From NCBI RefSeq assembly GCF_000143415.4, contig NW_003314290.1, forward strand, positions 1,395,897 to 1,459,896: a stretch of DNA of 64,000 nt. Reading direction: 5' to 3'. The position numbers were made by a program, and so were the translations under genes. Position 1 is the stretch's first letter; each line of letters starts with the position of its first letter. Shown piece by piece: positions 15,983-64,000 of this stretch. The notes under the pieces are model-generated. The model saw only the letters and a list, made by a program, of their open reading frames with translations. It did not search any database and had not been told where the DNA came from. This DNA comes from Selaginella moellendorffii. Taxonomy: Eukaryota > Plantae > Lycopodiophyta.

Positions 15983-16514
15983 GTTAAAATCACATAACCA
16001 ATGTCAGATTTTATTTGATGTGTAAAACATTTTGATATTTGTGCTTGTGTTTAGGAGTTGAAATATACTATTTATATTTGAAATGATTTAACAATTTATA
16101 GTATAGCTTTTATTAAATATATTTCAATTTTCTTACTGTTTTCATAGGTATTGTTATGCTTAAATTTACTTTTTCTTTTGATCTTCATTGCATTCTTGTT
16201 TTTTGCCATGCCATACTATCATTAATCAAAAAGTATGCATTTAAGGTTGTTGATGTTACTCCATTACATCAAGTTTTTGGTATTGTGGGGTGTGATCATA
16301 TTAATGTTGCACCCATCTTTGGTGTATTGCCATCTCTAGTTTCTATAAGACATGATTACATGGTTTATCCTATTCTTGGTGTTTTGCCATCTCTTGTTGA
16401 TGTTGAATGTGATCATGACATTAATTGACAAACTATGAATGATGTAATCCAGTTTTTAGAGAATATTCAAAAATCAAGTTTATAAGAAGACAATATGTAC
16501 ATGCTCAAGTGGAT

Positions 16515-16642
16515 TCTAGATTGTGATGATAAACTTGATTATTATAAAGATAGTTTTTCTAGATTGTGATGATAAACTTGATTATTATAAAGATAATTTT
16601 TCTAGATTGTGATGATAAACTTGATTATTATAAAGATAATTT
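16515..16642. repeat. 43-bp tandem repeat, 3 copies
   Basis: tctagattgtgatgataaacttgattattataaagata at 16515, 16558 and 16601. Confidence 0.9.
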
Positions 16643-17370
16643 TGGAGACAAAATAAAGATTTCATAGAGTAAGTGTTAATCTTTCAATTTGCTATTTAAT
16701 TCTCCCTCTTTATCTTCTATTCTTTCCCAACCTTCTATAAATAAATTCTTTTTTACAATTTTAAAAGCTAATGATTGAAATAATTTTTTTCATAAATATT
16801 TTATATTAAATGTTTTCATATATATATATATTATACTCATTAATTAATAACTTTGTTTTTATAAAATTGCTCCCTGTAGAATACATAGTAAAACTTTTAA
16901 CTAGTAGCTATTCAACAATAGTTTTAAAAAATAAAATAAACATCCTTAAATGTATTTCAAAATTAATTTAACTCTAAATTTTTTATATTCTTTTTTAAAT
17001 TAAAATTTATATAAGAAAATGTGACCACTCAATTCAACAAAAACTAAAAGTTACATAGATAACCCTAAACAAAATAATATGTAAATATACGTATAATAAT
17101 GCTCAAATAATCATATTCTAGAACTCAAAATTACTTTATCAAGAAACACTATCCAAAAGTTTATATTACCTTATTAAGAAACACTATGTAAAAAGTTAAA
17201 AGTTTAGAGATTTACAATAGTTTAAATAAATATTAAAATTTATTTTAATTTAAAATTATGAGTGTTTAGGATATAGTAATAGGTATATTAAGAATGGATG
17301 GACCAAATTCAATCCCAAATAAATGGTTTATATATTATAATATTATAATTAACATATTATCTAAGCAAAG

Positions 17371-17402
<32 letters not shown>

Positions 17403-19409
17403 CCAAACCTTACACCATCCTCCCTTTTAAAATATGAAAAGGTGATAACAATAAGTCAAGTGGACAATTATAAAGTACTATAAGAATCTGAAGCTCTCAC
17501 AAAACCACCAACATAGTTGTTAATAAATATAACTAAAACAAAACCCAAAGGCATAGCACAAACATTACTTAATTATGGAACCTTTATGAATTAATTACAA
17601 CTCTATGTGCAACTACTAAATTGTTGAATTAACCCCAAAGCCATAACTTTGAATAAAAACAAGGGACTTTGAGAGTTAATGTAGTTTATAAAGCACTATT
17701 GCAATAACTAATATATCCTATTTTTAAGTCTGCCTATTAATGATTTTCTAAAATTATTGTTAACTCAAACTCACTACCATAAGCAAAACTTGCCTTTGCA
17801 TCTTCCCTTCAATCAACATCTAAAAACTCAAACTCACAACTTTGTTTACCATTACACATAAAAGGTTTGACTCACTTCATTTATCCTTTATATCATCTTT
17901 ATCCCTTTCTCAAAGGAAAAAAATTGTGAAGCATTAACTTTGTTTTGATTTACATTTATCCTCACTCTACTATTTATATTCAGCTTCACTCTATTATCAC
18001 ATTTATTCAGCCTCATTACATCAAGGCTAAATGTTTTATTTGGACTTACTATGTTTGTCCTTACTTCACAATTTATGTCATTCGTCTTTGTTCCATTATT
18101 GTATCTGTTTGTCCTCACTCTATTATCGGGGGCCGAATTTTGTCTCTGAAGAAAAAATAATTTGAAGTGTTAGAGCAAAGAAGAGAAAATGAGAAAAATT
18201 GGGGTGTAAAAGAAGAAAAAGTGGATGAAAAAGCATTGAAAGAGGAATTTTAAACAGTTGTCAAAATATAAATAAGGAGAAAGGGCATAAATATGATCAA
18301 AACCTAGATATTAGGGTATTTTGGCCACTATAAAATAAACAAAAGATTCACACTATTCAACCTCCTTAACACACAACTCAACACTTAAGAAAAATTAATA
18401 AAAAAGTTTACACTCTCAAAGTAATACATAAATTTTGTAGTAGCAATAATAAAATAAAAGCTTTCAATAGCATTCTCGACCAGAGCCATACACTCAACCT
18501 AAAACTCTGGCCAAAGTGACTTAACCCTTGCAACAAAGGAATATTTAATGCCAGAAATCAAAGATAGAAAACACTCAACTCAACACTAGATTGAGAATGA
18601 TAATTATAAAAGTCATAAATGATTGACATACCATGAAAAACAAACATTGCAAATAAAGAAGAAACACTAGAAATATAAAAAGGTGGCTCAAGCTAAAAAA
18701 ATAAAAAGGTTAAAATTCTAGATTTTGTAAAAAAGTAATATAGATCTAAATTTAAAAGAGAATGAAGAAATAAGAACAAAAAGGAATACTAGAGTAAAAC
18801 ATTGTCAAAAAGTTTTACCCTTCAAGGATAAATTATAATGTTCCTCACCTCCACCAATTAAAAATAAATATATTAGGTTTAAACCCTTATTTATATAAAA
18901 GAATGGATGGCCCAAATTTAATCCTAAATAGACTTGTTGAGGTCTAGGATGGTAGTGAATATACCTAGAATATGCTTAGATATTCTAGAATATTCTACCA
19001 TCAAATGGTTGTTATTCATTTAGATTAATCTTGTATTTATAATTTATAAATATATTTATGATTATACTTTCTTAAACACTTTTTAATTTTTTTTTTTATT
19101 CTACCATCTAATGGTTGATATGCAATAAGATTAATCTTGTGTTTATAAATTATAAACATATTTATAATTATAAATTTTTATTTGATCAATTGGATTAATA
19201 AGTAAGAATAACACTACTATCAAACAAACCAAACATTAACGCATAACAAATTATTATATACATATATTTATAAACCTTACAAAATGTTTATAAATATCAT
19301 TCTTATAGATGTTTTAAAATAAAGATATATTTAAGACCTTATTAGCAGAAGAGTGTCACTAACTAGTTTTTAGTAGAGAAGCAGTGAAATTGTCATTAGA
19401 AACCTCACT

Positions 19410-22400
19410 CTAAGCATTATATTGCAAGTCGATACGTTGCCTCGTATCTGGAGGTTGCCAGCAGCAACCGATGGACCAATTCAAGATCCCATCGATCATA
19501 TCCATACTGGAGCATGCTTCCCACTAGCCAAAACAAAGGCATGAAGTATGAGCCAGTAATTGGTATTTCTCAAACTTACCAGATTATCCGTGCTACCTTC
19601 AATGTGGAAGAGCATCGTCCCTAATCCCTTCACCCCATCTGTTTCAGCCTAATGACAGACAATGTGTGATAATATGCGAGAAACTCCAGGCTCTTAAGTC
19701 TTACCACACAGGCGCAAATTAAGATCCCAGCTCCGCCTAAAGCTCCTGTTACTTCCGCAAGAATGTCTGATAAACACCTCTTCTTAGCGGAGAAAAAGCA
19801 AGGACAGGAAAACAGCTTACTTCTTCGATCCATGCAGCAAATGCTGAACCATTGCACAGAGCTTCCCAGGCATTGCCAGTTCTTTAGCCGGCCAATCAAC
19901 CAGTCTTCTCGACTTCGGCTGGCGTCCGTTACGTTGTTAATGTAAGTATACGTTCTCTGGCTGTCCGAGGCAGCACTCCCAATAACGCAAGTCCCTCGTC
20001 CCAGTTTACCGGCTAGCTCGCCCCTCTTGGCGTGCTTCCCGTTGATCATCCGTCCACCGTACATCATAGCGTCTTGGACTGGCAGCAACTTGGCAGCGTA
20101 GGGATTCGAAGTAGCCAGATCGTTCATGCTGAAGTGTCCACTAAAACTGGCCATAGCCCGATCCCGATCCCTGTCCTCGTCAGTCACTGGATGTCCTTCC
20201 CCGCTAGTAAGCTCTTCGGAGTTGGAAAGGAACTTTTTAACAGCGTCAGCTGTCAGCTCTATCGCGGATAGAAGTGCCTGTTCCTTCAGAAACTTCGTCA
20301 GCTTGTGTCTGGCGCTTCTCGTCCTCGCAAAATGCAGCCACCGCTTGTGCCGTAAGAATTGCTTCTTGTTTGATAGGCCCTGACGTTGCAAGCAACGAAA
20401 CGTTGAAGAGGCGAGATAAAAGTGAACTTTATTACCTCATATGTCAAAATCTCCACCACCTCGGCATTTGATAAAACGTGTGTTGGCGATACAAGGTTGC
20501 CATTGACCTGACAAAACAAATACATGAATTGATAGACAGTAAGATTTAGCTTACCTTTGCTCCAACCATCTTGTTGCCAACATCCGCATGCAATTGGTAC
20601 GCGTAGTCCACAACTGTTGCGCCTCTTGGAAGATTTTTGATCTGCGCAAAGCCAAACCTTAGCAACGTGGTGATGGTTACTAACTATCCAGCTAACCTCT
20701 CCCTTTGGAGTAAATACAAAAACTCGGCTCCCCAGTAGATCAACAGTCACAGTGTCAACAAACTCCCTTGAGGTCATATTACCAACAAATTCTTCTTGCC
20801 ATTGTCGGATAGAGTTCAGCCAGCTAACCTGAGAAAGAAACAGTTAAGTATACTTCAGGAAAGAGAAGATCTGCGTCCCTACACTTCTATACCCTGCGAG
20901 CAAGATCTGCAGCATTCAAACAGTTAGATTGTTGCCTTGAACCATTTATAGCTGGTGTTAAGGCTATGCTTCCACTGAAGTGCACGGCAATGCCATACTG
21001 CGCAATTTTGTCCATTTTGTCTGTTCTAATCTGCAAACAAAAGTTTTTAAGAAAATAGACCAACATAGCAACTATTAAGCACCTGAATTTCCAGCGGGAA
21101 AAATGTCTTTGAACCAAATGGGATGACTTTAGTGTGTAGACTTTGGTAGCCATTGGGTTTTGGGGTAGCAATGTAGTCTTTCATCTGAGCACGAATTTTA
21201 AGTTCAGTGGCATTACAAAGAAAAACTTACGGTTTGCGGTACAGGAGACCATAATGTGTGTACCAGTCCGAGAACATGATAGCAGACCTGCAGCAATCAT
21301 TTCAAATTACCAAAAACAAACCGATAATAGACACGATACTTGTTTGGCACTGCACAGACGATCGATGGAATCCGGCTTCGGCTGCAGCACAATCCTCACC
21401 TGTAACACAGTGGAAATTCAGGTGGCATAACCGGTAAATATTACTACCTGAGCAACGTCTCCAGCTTCTTCTAGATTTTTCTTTTTCTTGTATATGCTGC
21501 ATGCAAACCCGCTCCTTCACAATTCCAATACGTATTTTGAAACAATACCTATAAAGGTCTTTACATAAAGTAAAAATGTTGACACCATCAATTACATGAG
21601 AAAGAAATTGATCGCTTTGCACAGACTTTACCAACGCATTTTTGGCCTGTTCACAACGTGTCAAGAACACAACAAAGACAAAACAAACTTACCTGCAAAA
21701 TCAGATCGCTTTGACTTTTAAAATGCTTCTCGACTTTTTTTTTCATGTCAATATAATCTGCAGGATACGCATACATAAAAGATAGCTCTTCCAGTTCTGA
21801 CTGAATGAAAAAAGAGCACGTCATTGTTAGGACCAAGACCAAAAAGTGCATTTCAGTACCTTGATTTTATGTATACCTAGCAATCTAGCCAATGGTGCAA
21901 AAACCTGAAGCGTTTCAAGAGCAATATGCCTCTGAAGAAATAAGTGTTAGCACCGTGAGCTCGCTTAAAGTGAACGCCTAACTTGTTTGTGTTCTGGCAT
22001 GAACGACAACGTGCGCATATTGTGCAGTCTGTCAGCAAGCTTCACAACGATCACGCGCACCTAAAATAAATAAAGGCAGTGATGAGATGACAAAGATTTA
22101 AAAAAATCAAGTACAGAACCTCCTCTGTCATTGCAAGAAACATCTGTCGCAAATCGTCCGCCTGAGCATCCTGTACTGCAGCCTGAGAATCAGAAAATTG
22201 AATCTTTCCCAGCTTAGAAACCTGCAGATTTGAATCAGTTGTATTTGTATTCTTTTCAAAAGATGTTACCCACGACGTACCTTCGTTTCACCTTCGACGA
22301 TCCTGCGGACATTAAAACCAAACTCTTCCTCTAGCTTTTCAAAAGTTACAAAGTCCGTGTCCTCCACAGTGTCGTGAAGAAGTCCAGCCGCAATAGTTTC

Positions 22401-25949: not shown

Positions 25950-26194
25950 TTTAGTAAAATGTTAACTATTTATCAAACTGATATGTTTTTCTAGCCTCAT
26001 AAGCATCGTTTCGGGCTGAGCGAGCTTCTCTGCTTCCTTTCTGACACGTTCATCTTTTCTTTGTTGATCAACCCTGTCCGCTGGTCCTATCTATCTACTA
26101 TCTATCTATCTATCCATCTATATGTCAAAATAAGAATATCTCACCCGATTTGGTTTGGTTACTTAATTTGGTTTGAAAAAAAAGAGGGGATCTT

Positions 26195-27695
26195 ATGAAG
26201 CAAATGAAAGGAAGATTGCTTATATTTATTATATTTTGTGTGCTCATCTTTGCTCTTTACTTCCCTGTGTTTGATTTGATATTGAAAAAGCAAAAGTTTT
26301 TGCAATACCTTCGCCAAAATCATCAACAATTTGATCACACAGCTTTTAATGGTTTACTTCTTGGTAAAGGAAGGGATGATCATTGCAAGTCCCGTCTCGA
26401 ACAGCACCACTATCGGAGGAAAAGCTCACAATATGTGCCATCACCATACCTTCTCAAAAGGCTTCGAGCATATGAAGAACTCCATGCTCATTGTACTCAT
26501 GACTATGTTGAAGCTTTCCATCATTTTAGAAGTAATACTAGTGATTCCCGGTGTAAGTTTATAGTGTGGAAAAGTTATAGTGGTCTCGGGAACAAGATTA
26601 TCTCCATCACTGCTACTTTTGCCTATGCTTTATTGACAAATAGAGTTTTGCTGATTGAGCCAGGGCCAGAGAATTACATGGCACAACTATTTTGCGAGCC
26701 TTTTCCTACCAGTTCTTGGTTTCTCTCCACAGATTTTCCAATTTATTTGTTCAATCATGCCAAGCATAGACTTCAGTTTGATAATTGTAAGGGTGATCTC
26801 AAAGTTCAAGGGTATGGTTTGATTGAAATTATTGATAGTTTTGATGGTCTTGGAGATAAGTTTTTCTGTGAGCACGAGCAGCAGATGTTAAGTGAGAAAA
26901 TCCCATGGTTGGCAATCGTTGTTAATCTTTATTTCATTCCAAGCCTGTACAACGTTCCAAGTTTCAAGTTAGAACTAGATATGTTATTTCCAGAGCAAGA
27001 GACTGTGTTTCACCACCTTGGAAGGTATTTGTTTCATCCCTCAAATCAAGTTTGGAGTAGAACGGTGAGAATTTATGAGGATTACATGGCTAATGCAAGT
27101 AAAGTGGTTGGTATTCAAATGAGATTGCTAGAGCACCTTGGATCTGGTCATGAACATTTTCTAAACAAGATGATCGACTGTGCTCAAGACAATGGCCTCC
27201 TTCCAAAATCCATCAAGTCCAACAATTCAACTCAAGCTTCTAGAATTCCCACACAATTCATTACTGCTATAGTGACTTCACTTGATGGGATGTACTTTAA
27301 GAGGTTGAGAGAACTCTACTTGAATTCTGCAAAAGATGGATCATTAGTTCGAGTTTTCACTCCAGAGCCAAGAGAATGAGCAAAAGGTTGATAATCAAGA
27401 GCATGAAGAGAAAGCACTTGCAGAGATGTTTTTGCTTTCTTTCTGTGATGAGCTAATAACAAGTCCTGGATCAACTTTTGGATATGTTGGCCACGGCCTT
27501 GCAGGAATAAAGCCTTGGATCCTTGATAACAAGAAGAACTGCTCTAAGATGGTGTCACTTGAGCCTTGCTTCCATGCGAAAGTTACATATGGATGTAAGT
27601 GTATGCCTCCAAAGGATGCTCTTAGTGTTCAACATAATATTCAAAGCTGCCAAGATGTTACTTGGGGAATTCAGTTAAAATCAATAATATTGTAA
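26195..27695 (+). pseudogene. Xyloglucan alpha-1,2-fucosyltransferase (GT37, FUT1/MUR2-like), intronless, single +1 frameshift near 27365
   Basis: N-terminal TM segment, PSPYLLKRLRAYE, SGLGNKIISI..ALLTNRVLL, LFCEPFP, ETVFHHLGRYLFHPSN and GIQMR. The C-terminus (EKALAEMFLLS..STFGYVGHGLAG) lies in another frame. Confidence 0.85.
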
Positions 27696-29261
27696 TTTTT
27701 CCCACTTCAAAATAATATAACACATTTTTTTTATTCTATGGCCAAAATTAATATCATTTTTTAATCCATAAACCTTAGAGGCTTTACAAGGGACAAGATA
27801 TTACATTATAATATTTATTGTGGCTTTAAGAAGAGATGTTAGGAATAACAAAAAAGTTGCTATACTTACTAGTTTACTATTAAATTGTTGATGTCCCTTT
27901 TTCCTAATTATGTTTGGTGCACCACAAACCATGCACTATATGATAATAGTTAAAAAAAATTTCTTAGCATTGCATTTTTTCCTACTTAACCTCTTAGAAC
28001 ACCTAAGGAAAATGAATTGCAACAATGCAATAGTATTATGAGTTCAAGAAAAAAATCTCTAAAGAAAGACTCATAGATGGATCACAAAGTTGAGGCATGA
28101 ATAAAGCCCACAATAGAATATATTAATAAAACTTATTAGGGGTGAACACCTTTTAGATTTAGTAAAGCAAAACATTTGCTATGGAATCAAAAAGATGTAT
28201 CATGGATTAAAATAATGATTTTATGTTATATGGTGTAACAAAGGATAAGAATAAAAGATAGATTAATAGCTTGGCTTTGTTATGACAGAATATACAAATA
28301 GCACACACAATTGTTTTGATCAAAGGGAGAAGGGAGATGTGAACTCTTTCATATCAAAATGTTAAGTAATAATGTATTTAGTAACAACTAATTTATATAA
28401 AATCTAGGAAAACACTACTAATGTTTTTTTTTTTTTTTTGGTGTGATTTGGTTATGTTGTGCAATAAAATCACTATTGCATCTCTTAGCCCTTGAATCAT
28501 AGGAAGAAAGATTACAAGAGTTAAAATTACAAACACTAGAACATATAAATATTTATGTGTATTTTCCTTTTTTTGAATGAAAGTGTGACTGAAGATTCAT
28601 AAATTCTAAATAGTAAACTATGACAAACCCCTTAAGAATGTATTCTAGAAAAGAACAAAATTTCTCTTTTATATGTAACAAGCTTATATTAATGATTTTT
28701 TTCCTTTCAAACAGTTATATGGTTTTATATAGAATTTTATTTCAAATTTATTAATTTTAAAATTCTGAAACACTTGACATTTACTAGCTAGAAAGCATAG
28801 AGTACAAATTTAAAGAAGTGACAAGGATACTTTTTCTGCAAATATTTTAGTTTATGTTCTAATAAACATCCCTATTATAGCATGTAGTAAATATTTAAAT
28901 TGTTAAAACAAGAAGTGTCCTTTAAAACATTTTTATTTATCTAATATATAAAGAGTTGTGAAATTATTAAGTTTGCCATAACCTTAATATTTTAATGTTT
29001 ATAATGTTCATATTAAAGTATAATTGAAACTTGAGTTCAACTCATGAGTTTAACTCTTGAACTCGTGAGCTCAAATATAATCCACACTCCAGGTTTTGGA
29101 ACCGAGATAAACAAACTCTTGCCATAGCATATCTTTAATATGTTACAAATAAACTCTTGTACCTCTCTTAATCCCATGACGTTCCAAGTTTTAGAGAGCT
29201 AGACATTTGTCCATGGAAGTGACTGTCTAGAGATTAAATAGTTTCTACACAAAATAAAACT

Positions 29262-29306
29262 TGCACTGCCCAACTTGTGGCAGGGAAACCACTAGACCAG
29301 CAGTGC
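29262..29306 (-). pseudogene. Second, more deleted tRNA-Gly(GCC) relic
   Basis: Minus strand GCACTGCTGGTCTAGTGGTTTCCCTGCCACAAGTTGGGCAGTGCA followed by a T-run. It has the same acceptor stem as the relic at 25890, with the GCC anticodon retained and the T-arm lost. Confidence 0.7.
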
Positions 29307-29525
29307 CCTTAAATTTATTAATACAAAAAAACGTATTATAATTGCCTGCGCGTATGTTCTGTGTACATAGCTAATATTATACTAATGGAAAATTATGAAT
29401 CGTGTTAGCTTCAAAACTGTCCTGCTAGCAGAAAAGAATTACAGTAGAGCTAACGCTCCATATTTGTACCTGACGTCCAAGGAGAAAAAATTTGTTTGCT
29501 AGCTCTCGTACCTCTTTCTGTAATG

Positions 29526-31055
29526 TTATACATCATGGTTCCCACTTTGATTACGCTGAAAACGACTAGAGGGAATGAGAGGGGCCTCCTCGTCTCCAAC
29601 AGGCATGCTTGCATTGGCTGGAATATCTTTCTCGAGCACGTCGGAGTCTTTCTTATCGAGCCGCCATTCCTGAGAAACATACACGCGTCTTTAGTAAAAG
29701 ACTTGAGCAACCGGGTCGCGGTTCCAAACCTTTGGCTTGTCTACATCCACAAGAGAAATCTGGTGGACAATGGTTGCGTCCCGCATTTTCAAATAGTTGT
29801 AAAGCACAACTCCGGAGAGTGCTGAAAACACCGAGTTCCAAAATATTAGCACTGATGCATGATTTGAGACAGCGTTACCAATAGCGTATCCGATGATATT
29901 TAATCCCGTGAGCTTGGATTCTGGGAAAAGGATGGTTCCAAGCGCTATCAGCAGCCAGTCTTTCAGGACTCCCGCCACTCTGACAGTGAGAGCCCCTGTC
30001 CTCCCAATCACGAGGAAGATTGAGAAGTTCAGCGCCAGAGCACACAGTGCATTCGTAAAAAACACCCAGAAGCTAAATTTCCAGTGTTCAACTTCCATAG
30101 CCGGCTTCTCCAAAACAATCCAGGGGAAAAACAAGAACAAAAAACTAAAACAAAAACAGAATTTTACAATCTAAAGGGGAAACCAGAAGTCACATACCTG
30201 CATGGGGCGATGTAATATAAACTGGTGATGGGGTTCAATGTCAGGCCCTTCTTTTGCAGAAGTACTTGCGTGAGTACTAGTCGCAGAGCTTCACAGACAA
30301 TCCCTGTCACTTGGAAGAATGTACCGATGACGTTGAAGTGGATTTCACCGTAAGAAGAAACTGCCACTCCAACGCTGACGAGCAGCATGTTTAGAAACAG
30401 ATCCCATCTAGCTTTATCCGTTCCGCACGAAACAGCCATCATGAATGTTGCTACAGGCACTAGCAACAAAGAAAGTGTGAGAGCATTATGCAAACGGAAG
30501 CTGGAAACTTACTCAAAGCTTTGAGCATCTGGATGAAAGCCACGGAAATGTAGAGATAAGCAGTGTTTCCAAACCTGAAACCATGCAAAAGCTTAGGGAA
30601 ATGTATAGAAACGTTTATACTATACCAAAGGCTGGAAGCAAAAAACGCGCTTATCGGCACAACGCAAGATATATATCTGCCAAAACAAAAAACCATCCTC
30701 AGGAAACGATTGAAACCGCTTGATAATACTCACATATCGAACGTCATTTTGACTGGAGTGACCACCTGAAGAAAAACGCTAGAACATGTATTCCACGGAA
30801 AAAAATAGCTCACCTTCAAAACACGCACAAGGAAAAACGTGACAACTCCAGAGAATCCCATGTGTATCATCGTAAGTGAGATGGGATAAGGAAATCCATA
30901 GTGTTTTTTCGACAAGACCCACTGGAAAAAAAAACATCAGAGCTTTACTAAAAGGAACACCGACACAATACCTTGTTGAAGAGAATCACGCCAGAAGAAA
31001 GCGTGATGTAAATTAGAAGGTACAAATACGTCAACAGCAGCGATCGATTGATCAT
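29526..31055 (-). CDS. Nucleotide-sugar / sugar-phosphate translocator (TPT/NST family, At1g48230/At3g17430-like)
   Basis: LSSGVILFNKWVL, FPYPISLTMIHMGFSG, FGNTAYLYISVAFIQMLKAL, LNPITSLYYIAPC, GRTGALTVRVAGVLKDW and C-terminal DEEAPLI. Confidence 0.92.
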
Positions 31056-39500: not shown

Positions 39501-40037
39501 CATGAAAGTCCTCCTTTTTAAAAACTTCGAAGAACTTACCTCTTCTTTGGCCTGTGGATAAAGAAGTTCTGGCTTGTCCCCGAGTGTAAAGAGTGCCTCC
39601 GTGCATCCCAGCTCCGCAGCGCGGCTAGCAACGCTCAAAACTTCGTCCAGAGACATATAAACCGGCTTCCCAGGCTTTGGAGCTCGAGCAAAAGCGCAGT
39701 AGCCACAGGAATCCCGGCATGCTCTCGTCAAAGGAATAAATGCCTTTGGCGAGAAAGTGATGATACTAGAGTCGGGCCTAGAGTCACGGATTGCGGCAGC
39801 GGAGGTCATGAGCAATCGGAGATCGAGGCCACCGACGTCGAGCAAGATTCTCTCATCAATCTGGGGATAGCTCTCACCTTTTGCGCAGCGCTGCACTATC
39901 AGTGCCAGAGATTCCTTGGCGGAAGAAGCCTCGCATCTGATTCTACTCCTCCTCGTCGAAATGCTGGTGGCAGCAATGCTGGCAAGATGGAGGTAGCCTG
40001 GATTCCGATGGCGCAGCGCCTGGCACACGTCTAACAT
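36509..40037 (-). CDS. fbiC: Bifunctional FO synthase (7,8-didemethyl-8-hydroxy-5-deazariboflavin synthase; CofG-CofH fusion, FbiC-type), multi-exon
   Basis: CofG half: [76 protein letters not shown]. CofH half: [80 protein letters not shown]. Confidence 0.95.
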
Positions 40038-43000
40038 TGCTTGATCGAGCGAGTGTTAACCCAAGTTACAGTGCTTTTTCTTGGTTCCCATCACATGCAT
40101 TTTTAATAAAAGGTAGGTGTTTAAAGTGTCACTTCAACAACTGTGAAGTAATAGTTAAGCCCCCATGTGATTGAGCTTGACACAAACCACAAAAATATTT
40201 TGAGGATATTTTATAGTATATTTGACGATGACAATGCTCATTAGCCAATCTTTTGTCTTGATTTTGAGTTTGTCTTATGTTCAACTTTGCCAACCCTAGC
40301 TTGTTTTGCATATCCTCCAGGAAATCATAAGCATGAAATACTCAAACCAAACCCAAACTCAAACTCACAAGAGACTTAGGTTTATAATAGTACATTGGCA
40401 TAAATGAAAATATATTAATTGCCAATTGATGAACACTATTGTGAGTAAATTGAAGCAAAGGCAAGTACTTCTCCCATGCTCCCTATCTAGTTAAGTTTTC
40501 TACAAAAGACTTTAGCATATTTTCCAATAAGTGATTCATATGCTCTGACTGCCTATATGAATGTGGATGCTCACCACTACTCATGCTCAGGTTAGTCTCT
40601 AGCTTCTCAAATACCATTTGCTAAAACCTGGATGTGAATTTGGGATCCCAATCATTCACAATATCATATGGCAAACCATAAAGATTGAATAACTAGTTTA
40701 CTAAGCAAGTTCAAAAGTTTTAATAGTCATCTTCATTGGGAAGAAGTGAGCCATCTTTGTCAAATGATCCATAATAACCTAAATAACATTATTTCCTTGC
40801 AAAATCTTAGGTAAATCAATGATAAAGTTCATTAAAATGTTATTTTATTTATTCTTGGGTACACATAGAGGATGATAGAGGCTAATGAGCTTCTGATGAT
40901 CAACTTTACTGTTGGCAAGTCAAACAATCACGTATATACTTCTCAACATTTGATTTTATCCAAAGCAAAAAAAAAAAATGCCTCTTCACCAACATATACA
41001 TTTTTAGTACCCTCAGATGACACTTGGCACATCATAACATTCAACCAAAATCTATTTGATGAATTTGTTAATACAAAGAACCACCACACATCCCTTCTTC
41101 GCTAGAATTTCATTTTATGTCTCAAATGATACAAATTTGTCACCCTTCAAATCTATAGAGGTGTGTCTTAACAAAACCTTTGTGTGAAATATCAATAATA
41201 AAGGAGTTGAAGTCAACAAACTTCTTAAGTTCATCCAAGAGATTGTTGGATACCTTCATGAATGAAATAGAATTTTACTATCCTGAATAATACATCTGCC
41301 ACTTTATTGTCACCTCCGTGCTTGTACTGAATCTTAATAGACATTTCTTGCAGGAACTTTTACCAACGAGCAAGGTAACCTCAAAAATCCTTTTGCCAAC
41401 TGAAATACTAGAGAAATTAATGATTTGAATCCACATGGAAGTGCGATCCATATAAATAATAAAGCCATTCCTTCACAGCATACAACTCCTTATCTCGAGT
41501 AAGTTAATTCTGCTGTGTAGCATCAAACTTATGGCTCATATATGCAAAAGGATGCCCAACTTGAAGCAATACAACTCTAATAGCAATATCACTTGCATCT
41601 ATCTCGACCACAAAAAGTTTCTTAGGAATAAAAATTTTAATACAATATTACTTCAAATGTTGAAATGCCACTTCACACTTCTCATCCCAATTATGAATAG
41701 TAGTATATTTGAACTTGTTTTGGAGAAGATGGGTCAAGAGGGCTGTTATCTCTAAAAAGTCCTTCACAAATCATTGAAAAACTTTAGCCATATCAAGGAA
41801 TCTACAAAGATCGTGCACTATTGAAAGTATAAGCCAATTATCCACGACCTGAATCTTTATGGATCAGCTCTCACTCTATGTATGGAAATCAAATGCTCGA
41901 AATATCCAATTTGCTCCAAGAAAAACTCACACTTTAATAACTTCGAGTAGAGTTTGTTGTCCCTCAAAAGTTGCAAAATACTTCACACATACATCTCATG
42001 TTCCTCCATTGAAGAGATGAATACTAGAATATCATCAAAATAATCAATTGCAAACTTTCCCAATAAGGCTGTAGAACTTGATTCATCAATCTCTGAAAAG
42101 TTACACAAGCATTTGTCAAACCAAATGGCATCACTAAAAACTCATAGTAACCCATTCTTGTCCGAAATGCAATTTTTGGATCCTTTGGCTTGACATAAAT
42201 TTGATGATACTCTTACCTCAAATCAATCTTCAAAAAATATCAAGCATCATGAAGACGATCGAACAAATCATTGATATAAGGGATTGGGAATATATTCTTC
42301 ACCGTCCTATCATTCAATTCCTTTTAGTTCACATAAAGACACCATATACCATCTTTCTTTTTGACCATCACCACTGGAGCAACCCAAGAAGACATACTGA
42401 TCTGTAACTACCCTTTCCAAAGGTATTCAGCAAGCTACTTATTAATCTCCTCATCTTTAGCGGGATTAGTATGAGTTGGTTGTTGCTGATAAGGAGTAGT
42501 TTTAGGAACCAAGTCAATCTCATGCTGAATTTCACGTTTTTGAGGCAAACCATTAGGCAATTTATTTGGAAATACATCACGGAACTCCTCCTGAATGAAA
42601 TCCACCCAAGCCCTAGACCCACAAATGTACTCCAAATCAGATATGATCATATTAGAAAAAAATGGGTACACTACAAAAGAATTAGCTATCTCATATGTGG
42701 AAGTCACCAACTCCAAAGCATTAATCAATGGAATATTACTATTGTCTATCTTAATAATCTTTTTCACAGTGCCACCAACTTTAATATCTAGGATATTATA
42801 CTCTCAATTGATTCTTAGCTTCCTATCATAAAACCATTCCTTCCCAAAAATAACATTTTTACGACCAAGATCCATAATTTGGAACGAATGATGGTCAAGA
42901 ATCCCTTGAACCATCAAAGGAACACTCAGAGCCCATTTACCATAAACATAAGTGCTATGACCATCTACCATAACCACCTCATAGATTACTAAACTTTTTT

Positions 43001-43111
43001 CCATAGGCAAACCAAGTTTCTTCACCACTTTGGAGCTCAAAAAGTTGTGAAAAAAAGTCAAATAGTTGACTATTGACTAACAACTTTTATTGAGCCAAGG
43101 GGAACCAACAC

Positions 43112-43431
43112 CTCCATTTCTGCACTGAATCTATCAATCTTTCCATTGTGTAGACCAGCTATCCATGTAGTCATCCACTTGTACCGCAGTCCCACGGTGG
43201 ATACCTTTGTCTGGGATGCTCCACAAAAGAAAGGACATAAGCATGGATGCCCAATATGTATGATTTTCAAACTCCATTTCCGCACTGAATCTATCAATCC
43301 TTCCATTGTGTAGACCAGCTATCCATGTAGTCATCCACCTGTACCGCAGTCCCATGGTGGATACCTTCATCTGGGATGCTCTACAAAAGGAAGGACGTAA
43401 GCATGGATGCCCAATATGTATGATTTTCAAA
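43112..43431. repeat. 160-bp tandem duplication, 2 copies, inside the gypsy element
   Basis: ctccatttc(t/c)gcactgaatctatcaatc...atatgtatgattttcaaa starts at 43112 and again at 43272. Confidence 0.9.
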
Positions 43432-43881
43432 TTTAAGGGTAGGAATATACCTTGCTCAAGGGTATATTATATTTTAAGTAGCCATTAATCTATGGAAATC
43501 AAACCCATGCCATTTACTCCGATACCAACTATAGCACACCCTATCTCTTTCCCCTTAAGCCAACTGGAAAAAGGGCAATTGCTTAATGAAAGAGCCCTTA
43601 GTGGCTATTTTATCCTCATTTATCCCCCAAGGTTCCAAGGATCCATGGTGACAGTATATCCAAATTTCATCCCTTGATCACATGCACTATAGTGGAAGAG
43701 CCACCATAGCAAATGCTTAATTTGTATTCATGATAAATTCCACTATATTCACCTTAGCATTTTTTAATCCCTTCACAAGAGGATAATCCTTACCGTGATG
43801 TTTAGCCTTATGACAACAAAAACAATTACCCTCCACTTTGTCTTTCTCACGCTGATCCAAACGCACATGGAACAATAGATG

Positions 43882-44076
43882 TGTAAGCTCCTGAATTTGG
43901 ACTTCCCGGGAGGTCACCCAGCCCAGTACTATTCAAACCCAAGGACGCTTAACTCCAACTATCCCAAAACCCTTAACCGATTGAAAAAGGGGGTGCATTC
44001 TTATTCATGGGCCCTTTCCCTCTATATTTGAACCCCTATGGATCGTCTCTCGAGTCGTTCCCTTTGGTTGCTTACA
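43882..44076 (-). mobile_element. Cassandra-like TRIM solo LTR carrying a 5S rRNA-derived segment
   Basis: 195 bp with TGTAAGC...GCTTACA termini and a perfect 5-bp TSD AGATG (43877-43881 and 44077-44081). Internal 5S-like AGTTAAGCGTCCTTGGG..TAGTACTGGGCTGGGTGACCTCCCGGGAAGTCC at 43899-43954. Confidence 0.85.
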
Positions 44077-57241: not shown

Positions 57242-59076
57242 CTATTCAAGACGCCTTGCCACGCTTGTTATCTTCCCAGTTTTCTGGCCATGACATCCTC
57301 GCAAGTGAACCTTCAGAGAATCTGGCTTGAAAGTTCGACCACATTGCCTAGAACAAGAAGACTTCCGAGTAAGTGTAAGCGGCTCCGGGCAGAAACTTAC
57401 GGGCATTCTTGCAGCAACAATCTGAAATCCACGGGAGGAGAACTTGCATTGACAGCCTCTTGGAGGGTCTTTTCCCAATCGAGTCGGCTTCGTCCTGGTG
57501 TTAGAGGCCTGCAACGAAAAAGCTAGAGGAGTTTGAAACTTTGCGAACTAACGGAGTCCTACCTGTCTTCCTTGCACTTCATTTCCTTTTTCGGGGGGCT
57601 GAACTGCACCTTTAGCGTTGGAAGTTCCACATTAACACGTTTTATCGCAGGCGATAGACGGGGGCTGTTGTCTTCGACCTTCCGGGCTTCCTTAGTTGCA
57701 ATAAGCATACTGTTCTGTAACTTTCTTGCCTCCTCGCGAGATGCCTTGTCTACCAAGGATCGTCGGTCCGCATGGCTTGCAGCCGGGGAGTTCGTCGTCT
57801 CCTTCACAACTTCTGGAATAGATTCAGGATCCTGACTCGAGCTGACCAAACGAGCTGGCATCCTAGGAGACTCCCAAGAAGGAAGAACATCGTGTGGAAT
57901 CTTGGAAGCACTCTCCGCTTCGGACCTGGTATCTGCTTTGGACTTGCTCCAAGCCCATGCTTGCGGTGGATAGTGCAACCTGTTGTACTGCATGGAGGAA
58001 CAAGTGTTCGTATCGATCCCACCACAGGAGAGCAGCTGCCGAAGAACCGCAGTGCTTGTTTGCTTCCGGCTACTCTCCTCCAGTTGCTTCCTTACGGTAG
58101 AAACCAAACCAGCTCTCTCAGACTTCGTCCTGGAGCTTTGAGTTTCCTGATCACGTTGACAGCTTCTCTCCTGATCGTGCTGAACATCTCGGTGAAACTG
58201 GAACTCGTGAGTGTTTTTACCAGAATGCTCCTCCGTCTGCGTTGCTGCATCCTTGCCGTGGTCCGCAGTCACAGGAGATGCCGGAGTCTTGTACACTTTG
58301 ACGTCAGTGAAAGTGTTGCCGTTGCTTGATCCATCCGAGTGTGGGTTATCGTAGAAGACTTCGTCCATGGATTCGGTCTTTGCCTGCGTGAGCGTCTCCA
58401 TGAGCTGCCTGTTCACTCTGAGAGCGCCTTCGCAGTTGAAAGCTTTGTTCCTGTTCCTGGGCGATCTGCTGCCAGCGACGGAAGAAGAAGACAATGAGCT
58501 CCGCTTGTCATAGCCTTCGCTTGCTCGCATGGGAGTGTGGTGATGATAAGACATTGGACTCTCGAAATCCTTGTGTTCCTCCTGGATGCTTGGAACTCTT
58601 CCCCGATCGCTACGACTCTCTGGAAGGACGAAACGAATGAAAGATCATCCAAAGAACCAAACTGACCTTGTCTTCCATACACATTCTCCGATCCTTTGAT
58701 GATATACTCATTGTCGCGAAGCGGTAAGATCAGGTCATTCTCTGTCACGTCGTTCCAGATGAAATCGTTCTTGTAGCTCCTGGCAAGAGAAAATCACGCG
58801 AGGAACCACATAAAAAGGGGAGAAAGAAAGAACACAGCGAACCTTTTGTAGGCCCAGGAGAAGGCATCCGGCATGCCTTTCCCTCGCAGCACCGTCAATC
58901 GCTTCTTCACCTCTGCAGCACGAAATTATCTCAGCAAGTCCAAGATATCGACGATCGATCCCATCGAAAATACCGCTCAGGCAGAGACGATTTCCCTCTT
59001 GCTCCACCTCGATGAGATGCGGCTGCTCCATCCGTCCCCCATGGCTGAGATAATACACGACCTGGACACGACACAT
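57242..59076 (-). CDS. SOK: SOSEKI polarity protein (DIX-like DUF966, CG motif, C-terminal C2HC zinc finger)
   Basis: VQVVYYLSHGGRMEQPHLIEV..RLTVLRGKGMPDAFSWAYKRSYKNDFIWNDVTENDLILP..EYIIKGSE, LRQLLSCG, and CSRQCGRTFKPDSLKVHLRGC. Confidence 0.9.
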
Positions 59077-59517
59077 CACTGCATCGATCGATTTGCCGAG
59101 ATGATCGAGCTACAAGGCCGCCGGGATCGATCCAGCTGCTTGCCGATGGCCACACGCGCTGCCGCCACCGCCGCCCGGCCGCCGCCGCCCCAGGCGTGAA
59201 AACAAGAAAGAAACTAAGCAAGCCTAGCTCTACTTGAGTGTGAGTGTGAGACATGGGATATACGGAGGGCCCAGATTAGCAGGACCACAAACGGTCATTC
59301 GGCCCAAACCTTCCGTACGGTCATTTTCTTGATATTTTTTGGAAATATTGTTGCTATACATTCTCATCTTGTGTGATTGGGGCCTATACAATGTAGCTGG
59401 TGGAAAGAGCACTGTGATCGCTATTAGATCGTTTCCTCAGGCGGGAAATTTCTAGGGTTTATCATTTTCTAGGGTTCTAGACGATGAAGGTAACGTTCTT
59501 TCTCGATTCCCAGAGAG

Positions 59518-62500
59518 ATGAAGCGTCTTGTGTTCTTGCAGAGGCAGCATCCTCCCGACGACGACGAGGACGGTCGCGGCAAGCCGAAAGCCAGGGAAGA
59601 TCAAGCCCAGGCGCTCGACTTGAATGCGACTCCGCGAGGATTCGATCTCAATGCGCCATTTTCGGAAGAAGAGGGGCAGGAGTGGATTGCTGGCAGTGGC
59701 CAGGAGGATGCTTTGCATCGCGAGATTTTCAAGCAGCATCTGGAGCCAGCAGCTGATTTGGGAATTGACGAAGGTGTGCTTTTTTGTCTTTGCTTGATTC
59801 CTCATCTCACTTTGACGCTCTCATTTAGATTTGGATATTCTACATTCGATTTGGAGCGCGTGGACACAGGAAAATTGGCAGCGGCTAGACGAGATTCTGG
59901 AGTCTGTGCTTGATGAAATCAGCAGATTTCCATCCTCGCCTCCGAGATATCAGTACCTTACTTGCTTTTACATTTCCAAAAAGCTGCCAAACGCTTTCTG
60001 TCTTCCAAGAACATACAAGGTTCGTCCTCAAGGATATGACTGTTTTTCACTTTCAAGGATTTTCCAGGCTTTGCTTTCCTTCCTTGATTCAAGTCCATCT
60101 GAGGCTTCTACAAAGAAACAAAACTTTCTACCTGGTTTTTCTTGCAAGCTCTTGTTTCGAGCTTTTAATGAAAAGCCCGAATGGCCTTTAGAATTTGTGC
60201 AGGTACGCTGTGGCTGTTTGTCTCACAGAAGGTCTCGTGCTTGGGTTTGAGTGCAGGCCTACTTAGACGATGCGATCAACTTGCGTAACTGGGTGGACAG
60301 TGAGCACTGCAAAGAGTTTGTCGCTAACATACTTACGTCATTTGATGAGGTAATGCTCGATGGTTTTGCATCTTATTTGTACGTGCTTCTTGCTTTTAGG
60401 ACCTGACAGTGGGCACGGAAGATCCATCAGATGTCAAGGGCGATACTGCTCAGGTACTTCGGTTTCCAGTTTACAGCATGTCTAGGAATGCTTTTTGTTT
60501 TATGTAGCAGTGTAGCCTTAAAAACCGATACCCTGGGGACGAAATTCGTCAGAAGGCTAAGGCTGAGTTTATGCAAGCCCTCAATCATCTCTTAAAGGTT
60601 CCATTGATCAAAGAAAATCCCCGTATTCTAAGGTTTTCAACATTTTTTTTCCTTCGAGGTTTATCTCTAAGTCCTGCTCTACAGGATGTTGACACTAGGT
60701 GTAAACTACGAAGAAGTTCGGGTCATTGCATCAAGCATGATGGAGGGCTGGTTGAATACTCCCTTCCATTTTCGTCGCGCGAAACTTCTGCTGGATCGTG
60801 TTCTACATTTTACAAATGGCACAACAATGAAAGATTTTGAAACGGTTGCAAATATTTTATCTCTACGATTGAATCAGGGCGTTTCTCAGGTTAGTGACTT
60901 GTTGGTGCCTAAGTACTTAACCGTGGCACTGTTCCCAGATGAAGAATGCGTCGACCTCGTTTTATACAGAGCTTGTCATTCAGATAGTTCAGAAAAGACC
61001 AGAATACTCGTCTCTGGCATTAAAGGTACTTCGCTTCTAGTGCGTGTTTGATAGCTAATCTTATATACTCAGACATTTCTTACCGCGGAGCTGAATTCGA
61101 CGGGCCCCCATAATATGAAAGGCATTTCAGTTGTTTTAAAGGCTTTGCCGGATTCGCTTTCTCCGGAGAGAGCTTTGGCGTTAGTGATCAAGGTAATACA
61201 TCAGAAAGGATATGCTCTTCCGAATAATGTGCTGCTGTGCAGGAATTGGTTTTAAGTGACGATCATGTAGGACGGCTGCAGGAAGCCGTGACCAGGTACG
61301 TTTTCATCAACGTTTTCGTCATGTTCAGTTTCGTGTAAACTTCAGGGTTTTGAAGCAACTAAAAGAGATTAGCCCTTGTCTCTTATGCCGGGCTCTACTT
61401 GAACCCTGGGATTCTATATTGCAGCAGCAGGATTCAGCCAGGCAGTCATGGTTCAAGCAGGTAAGAATATTATCAAAACGATATCAACCTTTGTTTTAAT
61501 TCTCTACTACTTGGTTGCTGCTACAAGGTGATAGAGCTATCATGCCATTTTCTGATTCAAGCGGCTACTCCTTTTTCCTCCGATGAAAATTTCTCGTTGC
61601 CATTTCTGCGACTGGAAAACGATCTAGAGATGAATCTCTCAAGGAGATATTGCCTCTTTTTAAAGATCTCAGCATGAAGATTATGACCTTTCAAGTAAGA
61701 GCTCTAGAGCTCTCTTACTTGAAGCTCTTTTTCTATTTTGTGTTCTCAGGAGGAAGCGTTAACGTGGTGTGTTGACGTGCTTAGCTCACAGCTAAGCGCT
61801 GGAGATTGCAAGTTTTTCACTACTGCTGTACAGAAGCTTATGTTCTTAGAACCTGTTGAGGTAGGCAGTAGTGCATTGGCTTTTCGAATTTTGACGCTTC
61901 CACCAGGAATATAACTTATCATCGTCGAGTGGTACCGTCGAGCTAAACTCTTTCCAGCTTGTTGCATTCTCCATGCACGCTTCCGAGGAAGTACTTGCGC
62001 GAATAATTTTGATGGGAATATCGGTATTCTCTCTCTTTCGAGTTTTTGGGGACTTGTAATGAAGTTTAGGAACAAACAGAATCAGTTCCCGATGCAGCAA
62101 GAAGATGCTCTTCACATAATTGAGAAGCTGGTGTGGCGGGCGGCCGCTTCGGATAAGCATGCCTTCGGGACGCTGTTTGCTGATAGCTTGCAGGTGAATA
62201 TCAAAGCTTTTATCGTACTTTATCTGCCTAATTTTGGTTTGTAGTTACCTGCAGCGATTATGAAGCTTTCATCGTTTTACTTACCAAGTGTCTCTCGGCA
62301 GCCATTGCCGCAACTTGTCGTAAGCATTGCTGCTTTGAGTTTTGCAAGACCTGAGAAACTTTTGACAGATAAAAGATTTGTACTGGAGGTCTTGCCTAGT
62401 TATTATAGTTATCGCTGCTTATAATCCAGCGACAATTGGTAAGAGCGTTTGGGAGAACTTCCCATCAGTCAGATATCTTCTGCAGTACCTTATAACAGAA

Positions 62501-64000
62501 GGCACAAAGTCGGGGTTTGTTTTTCATGGAATGTTAACGTGACTCTAATGTTTTTGAGCTTGATGCAGTTTGTCGGCAGCAGATATCCTTGAAGACAAAG
62601 AGGCTGTACTAAACGATATCAAGGCTGAGGAAATATTAGACTCTTTTCTGATAAAAGAGTTGGAATGCGAGCCCACGAATGTGATGGAACCATGGAAAGG
62701 AAATATCATGCTCTTAAACACCCAGACCAATCGAAGAAAACCTCCAACTTACATTTTGGAAGAGCTAAAAGATATCGAGCCATCTTATGACTTGGGCAGA
62801 AGGATCCGCTCCTGCACGGAACCAAGCTTTTTGTGTAATACGGTCAGTTCGCAGGTACAACAGATGATAGGTATCACCTGCTGGTTTTCATTTCTATTTT
62901 CCTTAAAGCAGGACTTCAAGGAAGCCTGGGAATGGATCCAGAAGGTCGCGGGAAAACAGCCAGAAGTACTGGGAATGCTGCCTTGTGATTGGCAGGTAAC
63001 TTCGTTTTCAGCTCCTAAACTTTAATAATCAGAATTTGAAAGCAGTGCAAGCTCCTCTATCGCTTCATATTTCAAGCTGCCAAGTCTCCTATACACGATT
63101 TTCTACATAACTTGAGAAAGCTGTTTTCTGAGGACAAAGCTTCCGAAGGTGACGCTGTTAGTGTTATGAAGTTCCTGTCCGATAAATTGGTATCTCGGAA
63201 TTCTCATGTCCGAGCTTGCGGGCGAAAATGCATCTCTGGTATTATGAACGGCATGGTGTCGAAGACTGCGGATCCTACAGTAGATATTTATGCTCAAAGT
63301 GCCGAATTTACTTGGCTTGAGGCACTTGAGATTGCAAAACAAGCGGCAACGGTTTCTAGCGCCATTCAGGAAGCTTTACAATACGAGTCCTCCATAGACG
63401 TGGTATGCAGTTTCAAAAGTATACTTTAGAAGTTTTAAGTGCGCTGCTTTTCAGGTGTGGGCATATCTGAAGTTTCTAAAGAAGCAACTATCAACTTCAT
63501 CTTTGGCTTATCTCAGTGCGCGCTTGCTTGTATCAAGGAAACTTTTGGCCTCTAGCCTTCTGTCGACATCAGCAAAGGAAATTATTTCAGGTTGGAATGG
63601 CGAGAATGCTTTTCCCATCTTGGAATTTTTCTTGGATGCTTTCAACACAGTCTGCACACAGCCTTTATCTAAATGGGATGATGTTCCTGGTTCTTTGGTG
63701 AAGCTATTTTCTAAACGACACGATGGTACTGTGTTTCATATGGAAATTCCAAATATCGTGGTCGAGGCAATGGTGAAACTTCTGGGTTTCATTGGCTCCA
63801 ACGAAAATGAATCTTCCAGGGAGATGGTCTCATATGAAAACATCGTTCAGTTTCTCCTTCCAGGCTTTTTGGCCAAAGATGGGGACTTATCAATGGCTTA
63901 TATTGAGCTCAGCACCGGAGAGAAACTATCAATTCTATCGAAGGAGCAACAAGACTGTCTCATCAGCACAAAGGATGCGCGACTGGTTAAAGCTGGTGAG
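59518..64000 (+). CDS. INTS1: Integrator complex subunit 1 homologue (5' part; runs off the window)
   Basis: WPLEFVQAYLDDAINLRNWVDSEHCKEFVANILTSF, YEEVRVIASSMMEGWL, LYWRSCLVIIVIAAYNPATIG..WENFP and RRKPPTYILEELK..LGRRIRSCTEPSFL are colinear with metazoan INTS1 blocks as recalled. Confidence 0.85.

What the first reader, a model, noticed from the sequence alone, without database searches (positions are those of the whole stretch)
59518..64000. Integrator scaffold subunit INTS1 in a land plant
Seen: several ordered blocks match INTS1 across more than 4 kb of exons. Established: the Arabidopsis snRNA-processing DSP1 complex has homologues of only some Integrator subunits (INTS3/4/7/9/11-like), and I know of no angiosperm INTS1. 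Inference: this lineage may retain a more complete, metazoan-like Integrator, possibly with the INTS6/8-PP2A arm, that seed plants reduced.
Basis: partly seen in the sequence, partly recalled or inferred. Interest (0 to 1): 0.72.

Follow-up and report, generated by a model that had tools for sequence, protein, structure and literature searches.

The report
Spikemoss Integrator subunit 1 gene, short form
This is the expressed spikemoss (Selaginella moellendorffii) gene for Integrator subunit 1, already named so in public annotation; its protein lacks the last 40% found in moss and human, and whether flowering plants have the gene stays untested.

Summary
On the + strand, from ATG 59484 to past the window end, lies a 25-exon gene. 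Twenty-two exons are in the window, with GT..AG introns of 46-67 nt. RNA contigs from four studies show it spliced.

The window is S. moellendorffii scaffold GL377594.1. RefSeq already calls the gene "integrator complex subunit 1", but as two models (495 and 703 aa). The split sits at a 1-nt deletion behind 61585. All RNA contigs and the other haplotype lack that deletion.

The products pass two Pfam INTS1 domains above threshold: RPB2-binding (43 bits) and INTS2-binding (47 bits). In the PDB they significantly match (E below 0.5) only human INTS1 (E = 2e-54 and 3e-25), in the same order.

The mRNA encodes about 1,220 aa, matching human residues 1 to about 1,300. The R3/R4/C-terminal part is absent here and for 10 kb downstream. 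A moss and another plant keep it.

The inference is only partly supported. The scan noted the other haplotype copy before, plus INTS2 and INTS5. A conifer has an INTS1-like gene, so the loss is not at the base of seed plants. My searches could not test flowering plants.

It is an ordinary, already annotated gene. The short form is the only curiosity.

The parts
59484..64000 (+). INTS1 gene body within the window: start codon to window end. The gene continues 407 nt further, with exons 23-25 and the stop at window-equivalent 64407.
   Evidence: Spliced RNA contigs of 4 runs. Locus L004 with RefSeq gene ranges. Exon translations match RefSeq proteins exactly. Tail exons read.
59484..59489 (+). 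Exon 1 (coding part, Met-Lys). The 5' UTR extends roughly 140 nt upstream, judged from contig lengths.
   Evidence: In-frame TAG at 59478. Intron 1 is 59490-59541 with GT..AG. Contig pieces start at 59540 with 51-146 nt of record upstream.
59542..60632 (+). Exons 2-7 (59542-59773, 59829-60019, 60068-60202, 60257-60349, 60400-60453, 60508-60632). N-terminal region; no Pfam family except the RP2B-bd match, which begins at 60622 in exon 7. Exon 2 holds an acidic stretch and a motif that is 82% identical in the unknown plant L003.
   Evidence: Joints. Phases. tblastn to L003. Pfam blank.
60622..61153 (+). Region coding the INTS1 RPB2-binding domain (Pfam PF12432; residues 276-403 of P0014). It spans the end of exon 7 and exons 8-10 (60685-60889, 60939-61025, 61073-61192).
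   Evidence: P0014 E=5.8e-11, 43.1 bits against cut-off 25. Exon 8 alone E=7e-4 and human INTS1 354-416.
61243..62995 (+). Exons 11-20 (61243-61295, 61346-61460, 61528-61694, 61750-61860, 61907-62023, 62086-62193, 62245-62319, 62369-62514, 62569-62854, 62912-62995). This middle helical region is collinear with human INTS1 up to about residue 918.
   Evidence: P0016 267-836 against human 340-906, E=2.3e-54. P0008 3-327 against 582-918. Exon 19 alone hits human 835-880. Introns.
61585..61586 (+). One-base deletion in the window (A4 where RNA and the other haplotype have A5). It shifts the frame inside exon 13 and is the cause of the two-gene RefSeq split.
   Evidence: All contigs of 4 runs put an A in behind 61585. 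The hapB scaffold has the extra A. P0016 reads through. P0014 ends and P0008 starts on either side.
63046..63996 (+). Exons 21 (63046-63402) and 22 (63455-63996). From about 63160 they code the INTS2-binding domain (Pfam PF22929), which runs on into exons 23-24 beyond the window.
   Evidence: P0001 358-659 on profile positions 2-307 of 335, E=2.6e-12, 47.1 bits against cut-off 27.2. Exon 22 is homologous to moss and other plant fragments that carry the same Pfam hit.

Best explanation
The stretch is the first 22 of 25 exons of the Selaginella moellendorffii orthologue of Integrator subunit 1 (INTS1). It is one transcribed, correctly spliced gene. The public annotation cuts it into two models because the reference sequence of this haplotype misses one A behind 61585.

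The mRNA encodes about 1,220 residues. Shown here: these correspond to the N-terminal region of human INTS1 (about residues 1-1,300). That region comprises the arm carrying the RPB2-binding domain and the INTS2-binding domain. Also shown: the protein ends about 40 residues after the INTS2-binding domain. The R3/R4/C-terminal part that moss and another plant retain is absent at this locus.

Inferred, not shown: the protein acts as in animals. It would dock on RNA polymerase II through its N-terminal arm and tie it to INTS2 and the rest of an Integrator-like complex. That complex cleaves nascent RNA (snRNA 3' ends, promoter-proximal termination). The protein would do this with a reduced backbone.
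For: Expression and splicing: 20 runs in 10 studies hold about 0.6 of the sampled words, which is the fraction expected for exon-only sequence. Contigs of 4 runs skip 15 listed GT..AG introns.

Model check: all exon translations are exact substrings of the RefSeq proteins.

Family: Pfam RP2B-bd scores 43.1 bits and INTS2-bd 47.1 bits, both above the gathering cut-offs. The PDB search hits only human INTS1 significantly, collinear, at E=2.3e-54 and 3.1e-25. RefSeq names both pieces INTS1.

One gene: the allele model P0016 bridges both pieces. The RNA and the hapB scaffold carry the extra A.

Short form: the stop lies 85 residues after the window end. RNA contigs run only 683 nt past 63996. There is no tblastn or HMM similarity to the moss or L003 C-terminal exons in the window or 10 kb downstream. 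P. patens L001 and L003 carry Pfam INTS1_R4.

Roles of the human regions: residues 143-906 bind Pol II, and 143-1318 form the N-terminal region (PMC11062913).
Against: There is no biochemical evidence for any plant Integrator containing INTS1. Only the DSP1 complex, without INT1, is described in Arabidopsis.

The missing C-terminal part belongs to the INTS1-INTS2-INTS7 backbone in human structures, so a protein without it may not assemble in the same way.

The rest of the genome could not be searched for a separate C-terminal gene.

The reference of this haplotype carries a frameshift. If that is real, this allele would be null.
Confidence: 0.85

Rival explanations
1. Split gene: the C-terminal R3/R4 part of INTS1 is still made in S. 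moellendorffii, but from a separate gene elsewhere in the genome. The complex would then have a two-piece INTS1 and not a truncated one.
For: Moss and L003 keep a well conserved C-terminal part, 50-64% identical between them, which suggests it is needed. I could search only the 64-kb window and 10 kb downstream.
Against: Nothing similar lies next to the gene. None of my searches returned a Selaginella protein with that part, but they were not designed to find one.
Confidence: 0.15
2. Decaying relic: the gene lost its C-terminal part, has a frameshift in one haplotype, and is on its way to being lost, as in Arabidopsis. It would have no Integrator function left.
For: The protein is truncated relative to moss. 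The reference of this haplotype has a 1-nt deletion.
Against: The gene is expressed in 10 studies, and the introns seen (15 listed joints of 21 in the window) are removed precisely. The reading frame is open over about 1,220 codons in RNA. Similarity to human is strong at E=2e-54. The truncation falls at a domain boundary. RNA contigs that carry hapA alleles at 62434, 63046 and 63872 still have the extra A. This points to a reference error, not a dead allele.
Confidence: 0.07
3. Annotation or assembly artefact: the true protein is longer, and the annotated stop comes from a second sequence error or a mis-called last exon.
For: One indel error is already evident in this gene. The other haplotype has a 644-N gap inside the gene, so it cannot confirm exons 21-22; it resumes before the 3' end.
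Against: RNA contigs splice from 63996 into the annotated next exon, and their loose ends match it. They end 683 nt later. The three frames downstream show no further INTS1-like exons. The next genes are unrelated: HMA and B3.
Confidence: 0.08

Closest known systems
Human INTS1 (PDB 7CUN chain A, 8RBX chain a; 2,190 aa)
   Same: Collinear sequence similarity from human residue 340 to 918 (E=2.3e-54), with a weaker match at 1044-1109. The same two Pfam domains occur in the same order: RPB2-binding, then INTS2-binding.
   Different: The spikemoss protein has about 1,220 residues and ends just after the INTS2-binding domain. Nothing corresponds to human residues from about 1,320 to 2,190 (R3, R4, C-terminus). 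No Pfam R3 or R4 hit was found.
INTS1 of the moss Physcomitrium patens (contig L001 from SRR191864) and of an unidentified plant (L003)
   Same: The INTS2-binding-domain exon is homologous at 27-33% identity. In L003 the whole N-terminal and middle part is collinear with the spikemoss protein.
   Different: Both go on for roughly another 900-1,000 codons, including Pfam INTS1_R4 (33-34 bits) and a conserved last exon. The spikemoss gene stops.
Arabidopsis DSP1 complex (DSP1-4 plus CPSF73-I)
   Same: It is a plant machine for snRNA 3' end cleavage, with subunits related to INT3, INT4, INT7 and INT9 (PMC5079582; PMC10533338).
   Different: It is described without any INT1-like scaffold. The authors state that INT1 is missing in plants. 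The gene here shows that this statement does not hold for lycophytes or mosses.
Cryptomeria japonica SUGI_0492850
   Same: It is reported as an INTS1-like gene of a conifer, with substitutions listed up to residue 1047.
   Different: I did not have its sequence, so homology to this gene is untested. Its table shows no Araport11 counterpart.

Membership tests
Integrator subunit 1 (INTS1) | N-terminal RPB2-binding domain (Pfam PF12432, formerly DUF3677) above the gathering score | tested here: met
   P0014, the RefSeq product of exons 1-13 of this locus, gives E=5.8e-11 and 43.1 bits against cut-off 25. Exon 8 alone gives 20 bits.
Integrator subunit 1 (INTS1) | INTS2-binding domain (Pfam PF22929) above the gathering score | tested here: met
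   P0001, the RefSeq product of exons 13-25, gives E=2.6e-12 and 47.1 bits against cut-off 27.2, covering profile positions 2-307 of 335.
Integrator subunit 1 (INTS1) | Best and collinear match to an experimentally defined INTS1 | tested here: met
   Among 177,635 PDB sequences only human INTS1 is hit significantly. E=2.3e-54 and 3.1e-25, in the same order along both proteins.
Integrator subunit 1 (INTS1) | C-terminal R3 and R4 domains (Pfam PF22927, PF22928) and a full length of about 2,000-2,200 residues | tested here: not met
   P0001 has no R3 or R4 hit. The protein is about 1,220 aa. No similarity to the moss or L003 C-terminal exons was found in the window or 10 kb downstream.
Integrator subunit 1 (INTS1) | Reciprocal best hit in complete proteomes (orthology) | tested here: inconclusive
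   The only relatives found in the genome are the allelic models on GL377575.1, which share the same neighbours. A full proteome search was not possible.
Integrator subunit 1 (INTS1) | Physical membership of a complex with INTS2/INTS7, the cleavage module and Pol II | not testable with these tools
   This needs affinity purification and mass spectrometry.
Arabidopsis-type DSP1 complex subunit | Homology to DSP1-4 (INT7-, INT3-, INT4- or INT9-like) or to CPSF73-I | tested here: not met
   The Pfam and PDB hits are to INTS1 only.

The most novel reading that the evidence does not exclude
S. moellendorffii runs its Integrator with a natural minimal INTS1. This protein keeps only the Pol II-binding arm and the INTS2-binding domain, and no separate gene supplies the C-terminal backbone part. 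That would mark an intermediate step in a stepwise loss of the INTS1/2/5 backbone in vascular plants, ending with its absence in Arabidopsis. It would also give a natural test of which INTS1 parts are dispensable.
Probability: 0.3. Interest if true: 0.5.

Novelty: already known. Interest (0 to 1): 0.3.

Why it matters
Papers on plant snRNA processing state that the scaffold INT1 is missing in plants (PMC5079582). This gene, the moss contig and a conifer report show that the statement is an Arabidopsis-centred view. Lycophytes and mosses, and apparently conifers, keep INTS1. The databases already say so for Selaginella, so the identification adds little.

Two points are useful. First, the two RefSeq genes at this locus are one gene, split by a one-base reference error. 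Second, the spikemoss protein is a short form that ends at the INTS2-binding domain, while moss keeps the full-length type. If the short form is real and functional, it bears on which parts of INTS1 an Integrator needs. It would also bear on how the complex was dismantled during plant evolution.

Tried and rejected
Exon-by-exon Pfam scans gave one weak INTS1 hit (exon 8) and nothing else. Exon-by-exon PDB searches gave weak but collinear INTS1 hits for exons 8 and 19, and none for exons 21 and 22.

The Atlas search with exon 22 gave no usable hit. With P0016 it gave mostly other helical-repeat families and one INTS1 cluster without taxa.

The word search with exon 22 was blank. With P0001 and with P0016 region 260-520 it returned only Selaginella models. 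The length filter excludes proteins of about 2,000 aa, so these blanks say nothing about flowering plants.

It returned the gene's own model and six unnamed fragments of 184-265 aa.

I looked up run accessions in papers to name the source organisms. This worked only for SRR191864, which is Physcomitrella patens.

A mixed alignment (A1) meant to serve as a long profile was dropped. MAFFT pinned the fragment ends to the first and last columns, so the N-terminal columns would have been lost.

Paper hits for 'integrator complex subunit 1' in barley and strawberry were really subunit 11. No open paper describes plant INTS1 apart from the Cryptomeria mention. My last paper search was badly framed and gave nothing.

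The joined step is left out. Whole-protein evidence comes from RefSeq proteins that the tools returned.

Structure prediction was not run. The Atlas model of P0016 has pLDDT 0.48, and no deep alignment was available.
Full report
WHAT IS THERE

The region is an intron-rich gene on the + strand. Twenty public runs from ten studies hold about 0.6 of the sampled 31-letter words of 59400-64000. That is the share expected if they hold only the exons.

Contigs of four runs from four studies, laid on the stretch, skip 15 listed GT..AG introns of 46-67 nt. They run on past 63996 into sequence that is not in the window.

Using these joints and the record arithmetic I placed 21 introns and 22 exons in the window. 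Fifteen introns are seen directly as joints; the other six are inferred. The start codon is ATG 59484, preceded by an in-frame TAG at 59478.

Every exon translation is an exact substring of the RefSeq proteins found later.

WHOSE GENE IT IS

The exhaustive protein search with exon 22 returned a 702-aa protein that is 99% identical. The cluster look-up names it XP_024536749.1, integrator complex subunit 1 isoform X2 of Selaginella moellendorffii.

Its locus is scaffold GL377594.1. The fetched stretch L004 is identical to the window where they overlap, and L004 position equals window position minus 51673.

The upstream neighbour on the other strand is a SOSEKI gene (Pfam SOK). That fits a land plant.

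An earlier scan note had already called the genome a spikemoss. It placed a zinc-finger-GDH gene 5,847 nt beyond the window end, and L004 shows that gene there.

ONE GENE, ANNOTATED AS TWO

RefSeq has two adjacent genes at this locus:
- a 495-aa 'integrator complex subunit 1 homolog' (P0014, window 59484-61633);
- a 700-703-aa 'integrator complex subunit 1 isoform X1-X4' (P0008 and relatives, from window 61674).

The break sits at a run of A behind 61585. The window has four A. All RNA contigs of the four runs have five, and so does the other haplotype scaffold GL377575.1. The allelic RefSeq model P0016 reads straight through.

The RNA contigs that carry the window's alleles at 62434, 63046 and 63872 still have the fifth A. 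Contigs do not keep phase. Even so, this pattern fits a reference error better than a dead allele whose mRNA is degraded.

The allelic model stops at 849 aa because that scaffold has a 644-N gap inside the gene.

The isoforms X1-X4 differ by tandem acceptors at introns 15 (62079 or 62085) and 19 (62908 or 62911).

IS IT INTS1?

Yes, by sequence.
- P0014 passes Pfam INTS1_RP2B-bd at 43.1 bits against a cut-off of 25.
- P0001 passes INTS1_INTS2-bd at 47.1 bits against 27.2.
- Against all PDB sequences, P0016 hits only human INTS1: E=2.3e-54, residues 267-836 on 340-906.
- P0008 also hits human INTS1: E=3.1e-25, residues 3-327 on 582-918, with a weak further match of 420-479 on 1044-1109.

The single exons 8 and 19 already gave INTS1 as top or only PDB hit, with the same offset.

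THE SHORT FORM

The mRNA codes for about 1,220 residues. That is 3,410 coding nt plus the missing A in the window, then 85 more residues in three small exons.

The protein ends about 40 residues after the INTS2-binding domain. RNA contigs extend only 683 nt past 63996.

The INTS2-domain exon has relatives in six unnamed fragments. One lies on a contig from SRR191864, a Physcomitrella patens genome run according to PMC5021289. Another lies on a 14.8-kb contig of an unidentified plant, L003.

L003 is collinear with the spikemoss protein from residue 24 to the INTS2 domain.

Both contigs then continue for several more exons. Those exons are 50-64% identical between the two contigs. They include Pfam INTS1_R4 above threshold and a conserved last exon.

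Nothing similar is found in the window or in the 10 kb downstream of the spikemoss gene, by tblastn or by small profiles. The next genes there are HMA, an unnamed gene, B3 and the GDH fusion.

So the full-length type exists in land plants, and the spikemoss locus encodes a truncated type. I could not search the rest of the genome for a separate C-terminal gene.

HOW IT PROBABLY WORKS

In human Integrator, INTS1 residues 143-906 form the arm that binds Pol II. Residues 143-1318 are the 'N-terminal region'. INTS12 binds the flexible N-terminus. INTS1-INTS2-INTS7 form a well-ordered core (PMC11062913).

The spikemoss protein corresponds to that N-terminal region. The likely role is therefore to bind Pol II and INTS2 within an Integrator-like complex. 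This is inferred from homology only.

The earlier notes on INTS2 and INTS5 in this genome fit that picture. I did not check them.

THE EVOLUTIONARY CLAIM

Liu et al. 2016 state that INT1 is missing in plants, and they found Arabidopsis counterparts only for INT3, 4, 7 and 9. A 2023 review repeats the reduced complex.

A 2026 Cryptomeria paper lists an INTS1-like gene. Its table gives no Araport11 hit for it.

Together with the moss contig, this means INTS1 is present in mosses and lycophytes and apparently in a conifer, and is probably absent in Arabidopsis.

Whether any flowering plant has it could not be tested. The three word searches cannot see proteins of about 2,000 aa. The unnamed fragments could not be assigned to organisms.

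VERDICT

The scan has already reported the allelic copy, with the same short-form reading.

This report adds the merge of the two gene models, the likely reference error, and direct evidence that the truncation is specific to this lineage relative to moss.

Noticed in passing
window 61585-61586: The reference has A4 where all RNA contigs of 4 runs and the other haplotype have A5. This frameshift makes RefSeq split INTS1 into two genes (XP_024536569.1 and XP_002975956.2 with its isoforms).
   Followed up: yes
window 57242-59076, minus strand: The divergent upstream neighbour is a SOSEKI gene (Pfam SOK DIX-like domain, with a weak zf-C2HC_2 hit). Its first coding exon ends about 400 nt from the INTS1 start, so the two genes probably share a promoter region.
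   Followed up: partly
window 62079/62085 and 62908/62911: Tandem (NAGNAG-type) acceptor sites at introns 15 and 19 add or drop Asn-Gln and Gln. They explain RefSeq isoforms X1-X4.
   Followed up: partly
window 62682, 63357, 63608, 63815: RNA contigs of some runs carry letters (T>C, T>C, G>A, T>C) found in neither assembled haplotype. The sequenced plants may differ from the reference genotype, or these are contig errors.
   Followed up: no
L010 about 9736-10380 (GL377575.1, other haplotype): A 644-N assembly gap sits inside the allelic INTS1 gene. The allelic RefSeq model ends at 849 aa by reading into intron 20. Several mismatches cluster next to the gap (window-equivalent 63626-63737).
   Followed up: partly
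L004 12735-13249 (window-equivalent 64408-64922): RNA contigs run about 427 nt past the INTS1 stop. That would reach into the annotated 86-aa HMA gene, which starts 196 nt after the stop. This could be an overlapping 3' UTR or a contig that merges two transcripts.
   Followed up: no
L003 1037-12200 and 12735-14562: An unidentified plant (run SRR33208241) has a compact full-length-type INTS1 gene with short introns, next to a Ty3/gypsy-like reverse transcriptase. An N-terminal motif of about 23 residues is 82% identical to spikemoss exon 2. It might be a conserved partner-binding site.
   Followed up: partly
window 1-4000, 16001-20000, 26001-30000, 40001-44000: Blocks of low G+C (0.24-0.38) alternate with gene-like 0.45-0.57 stretches. 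They are probably repeats or transposon remains.
   Followed up: no
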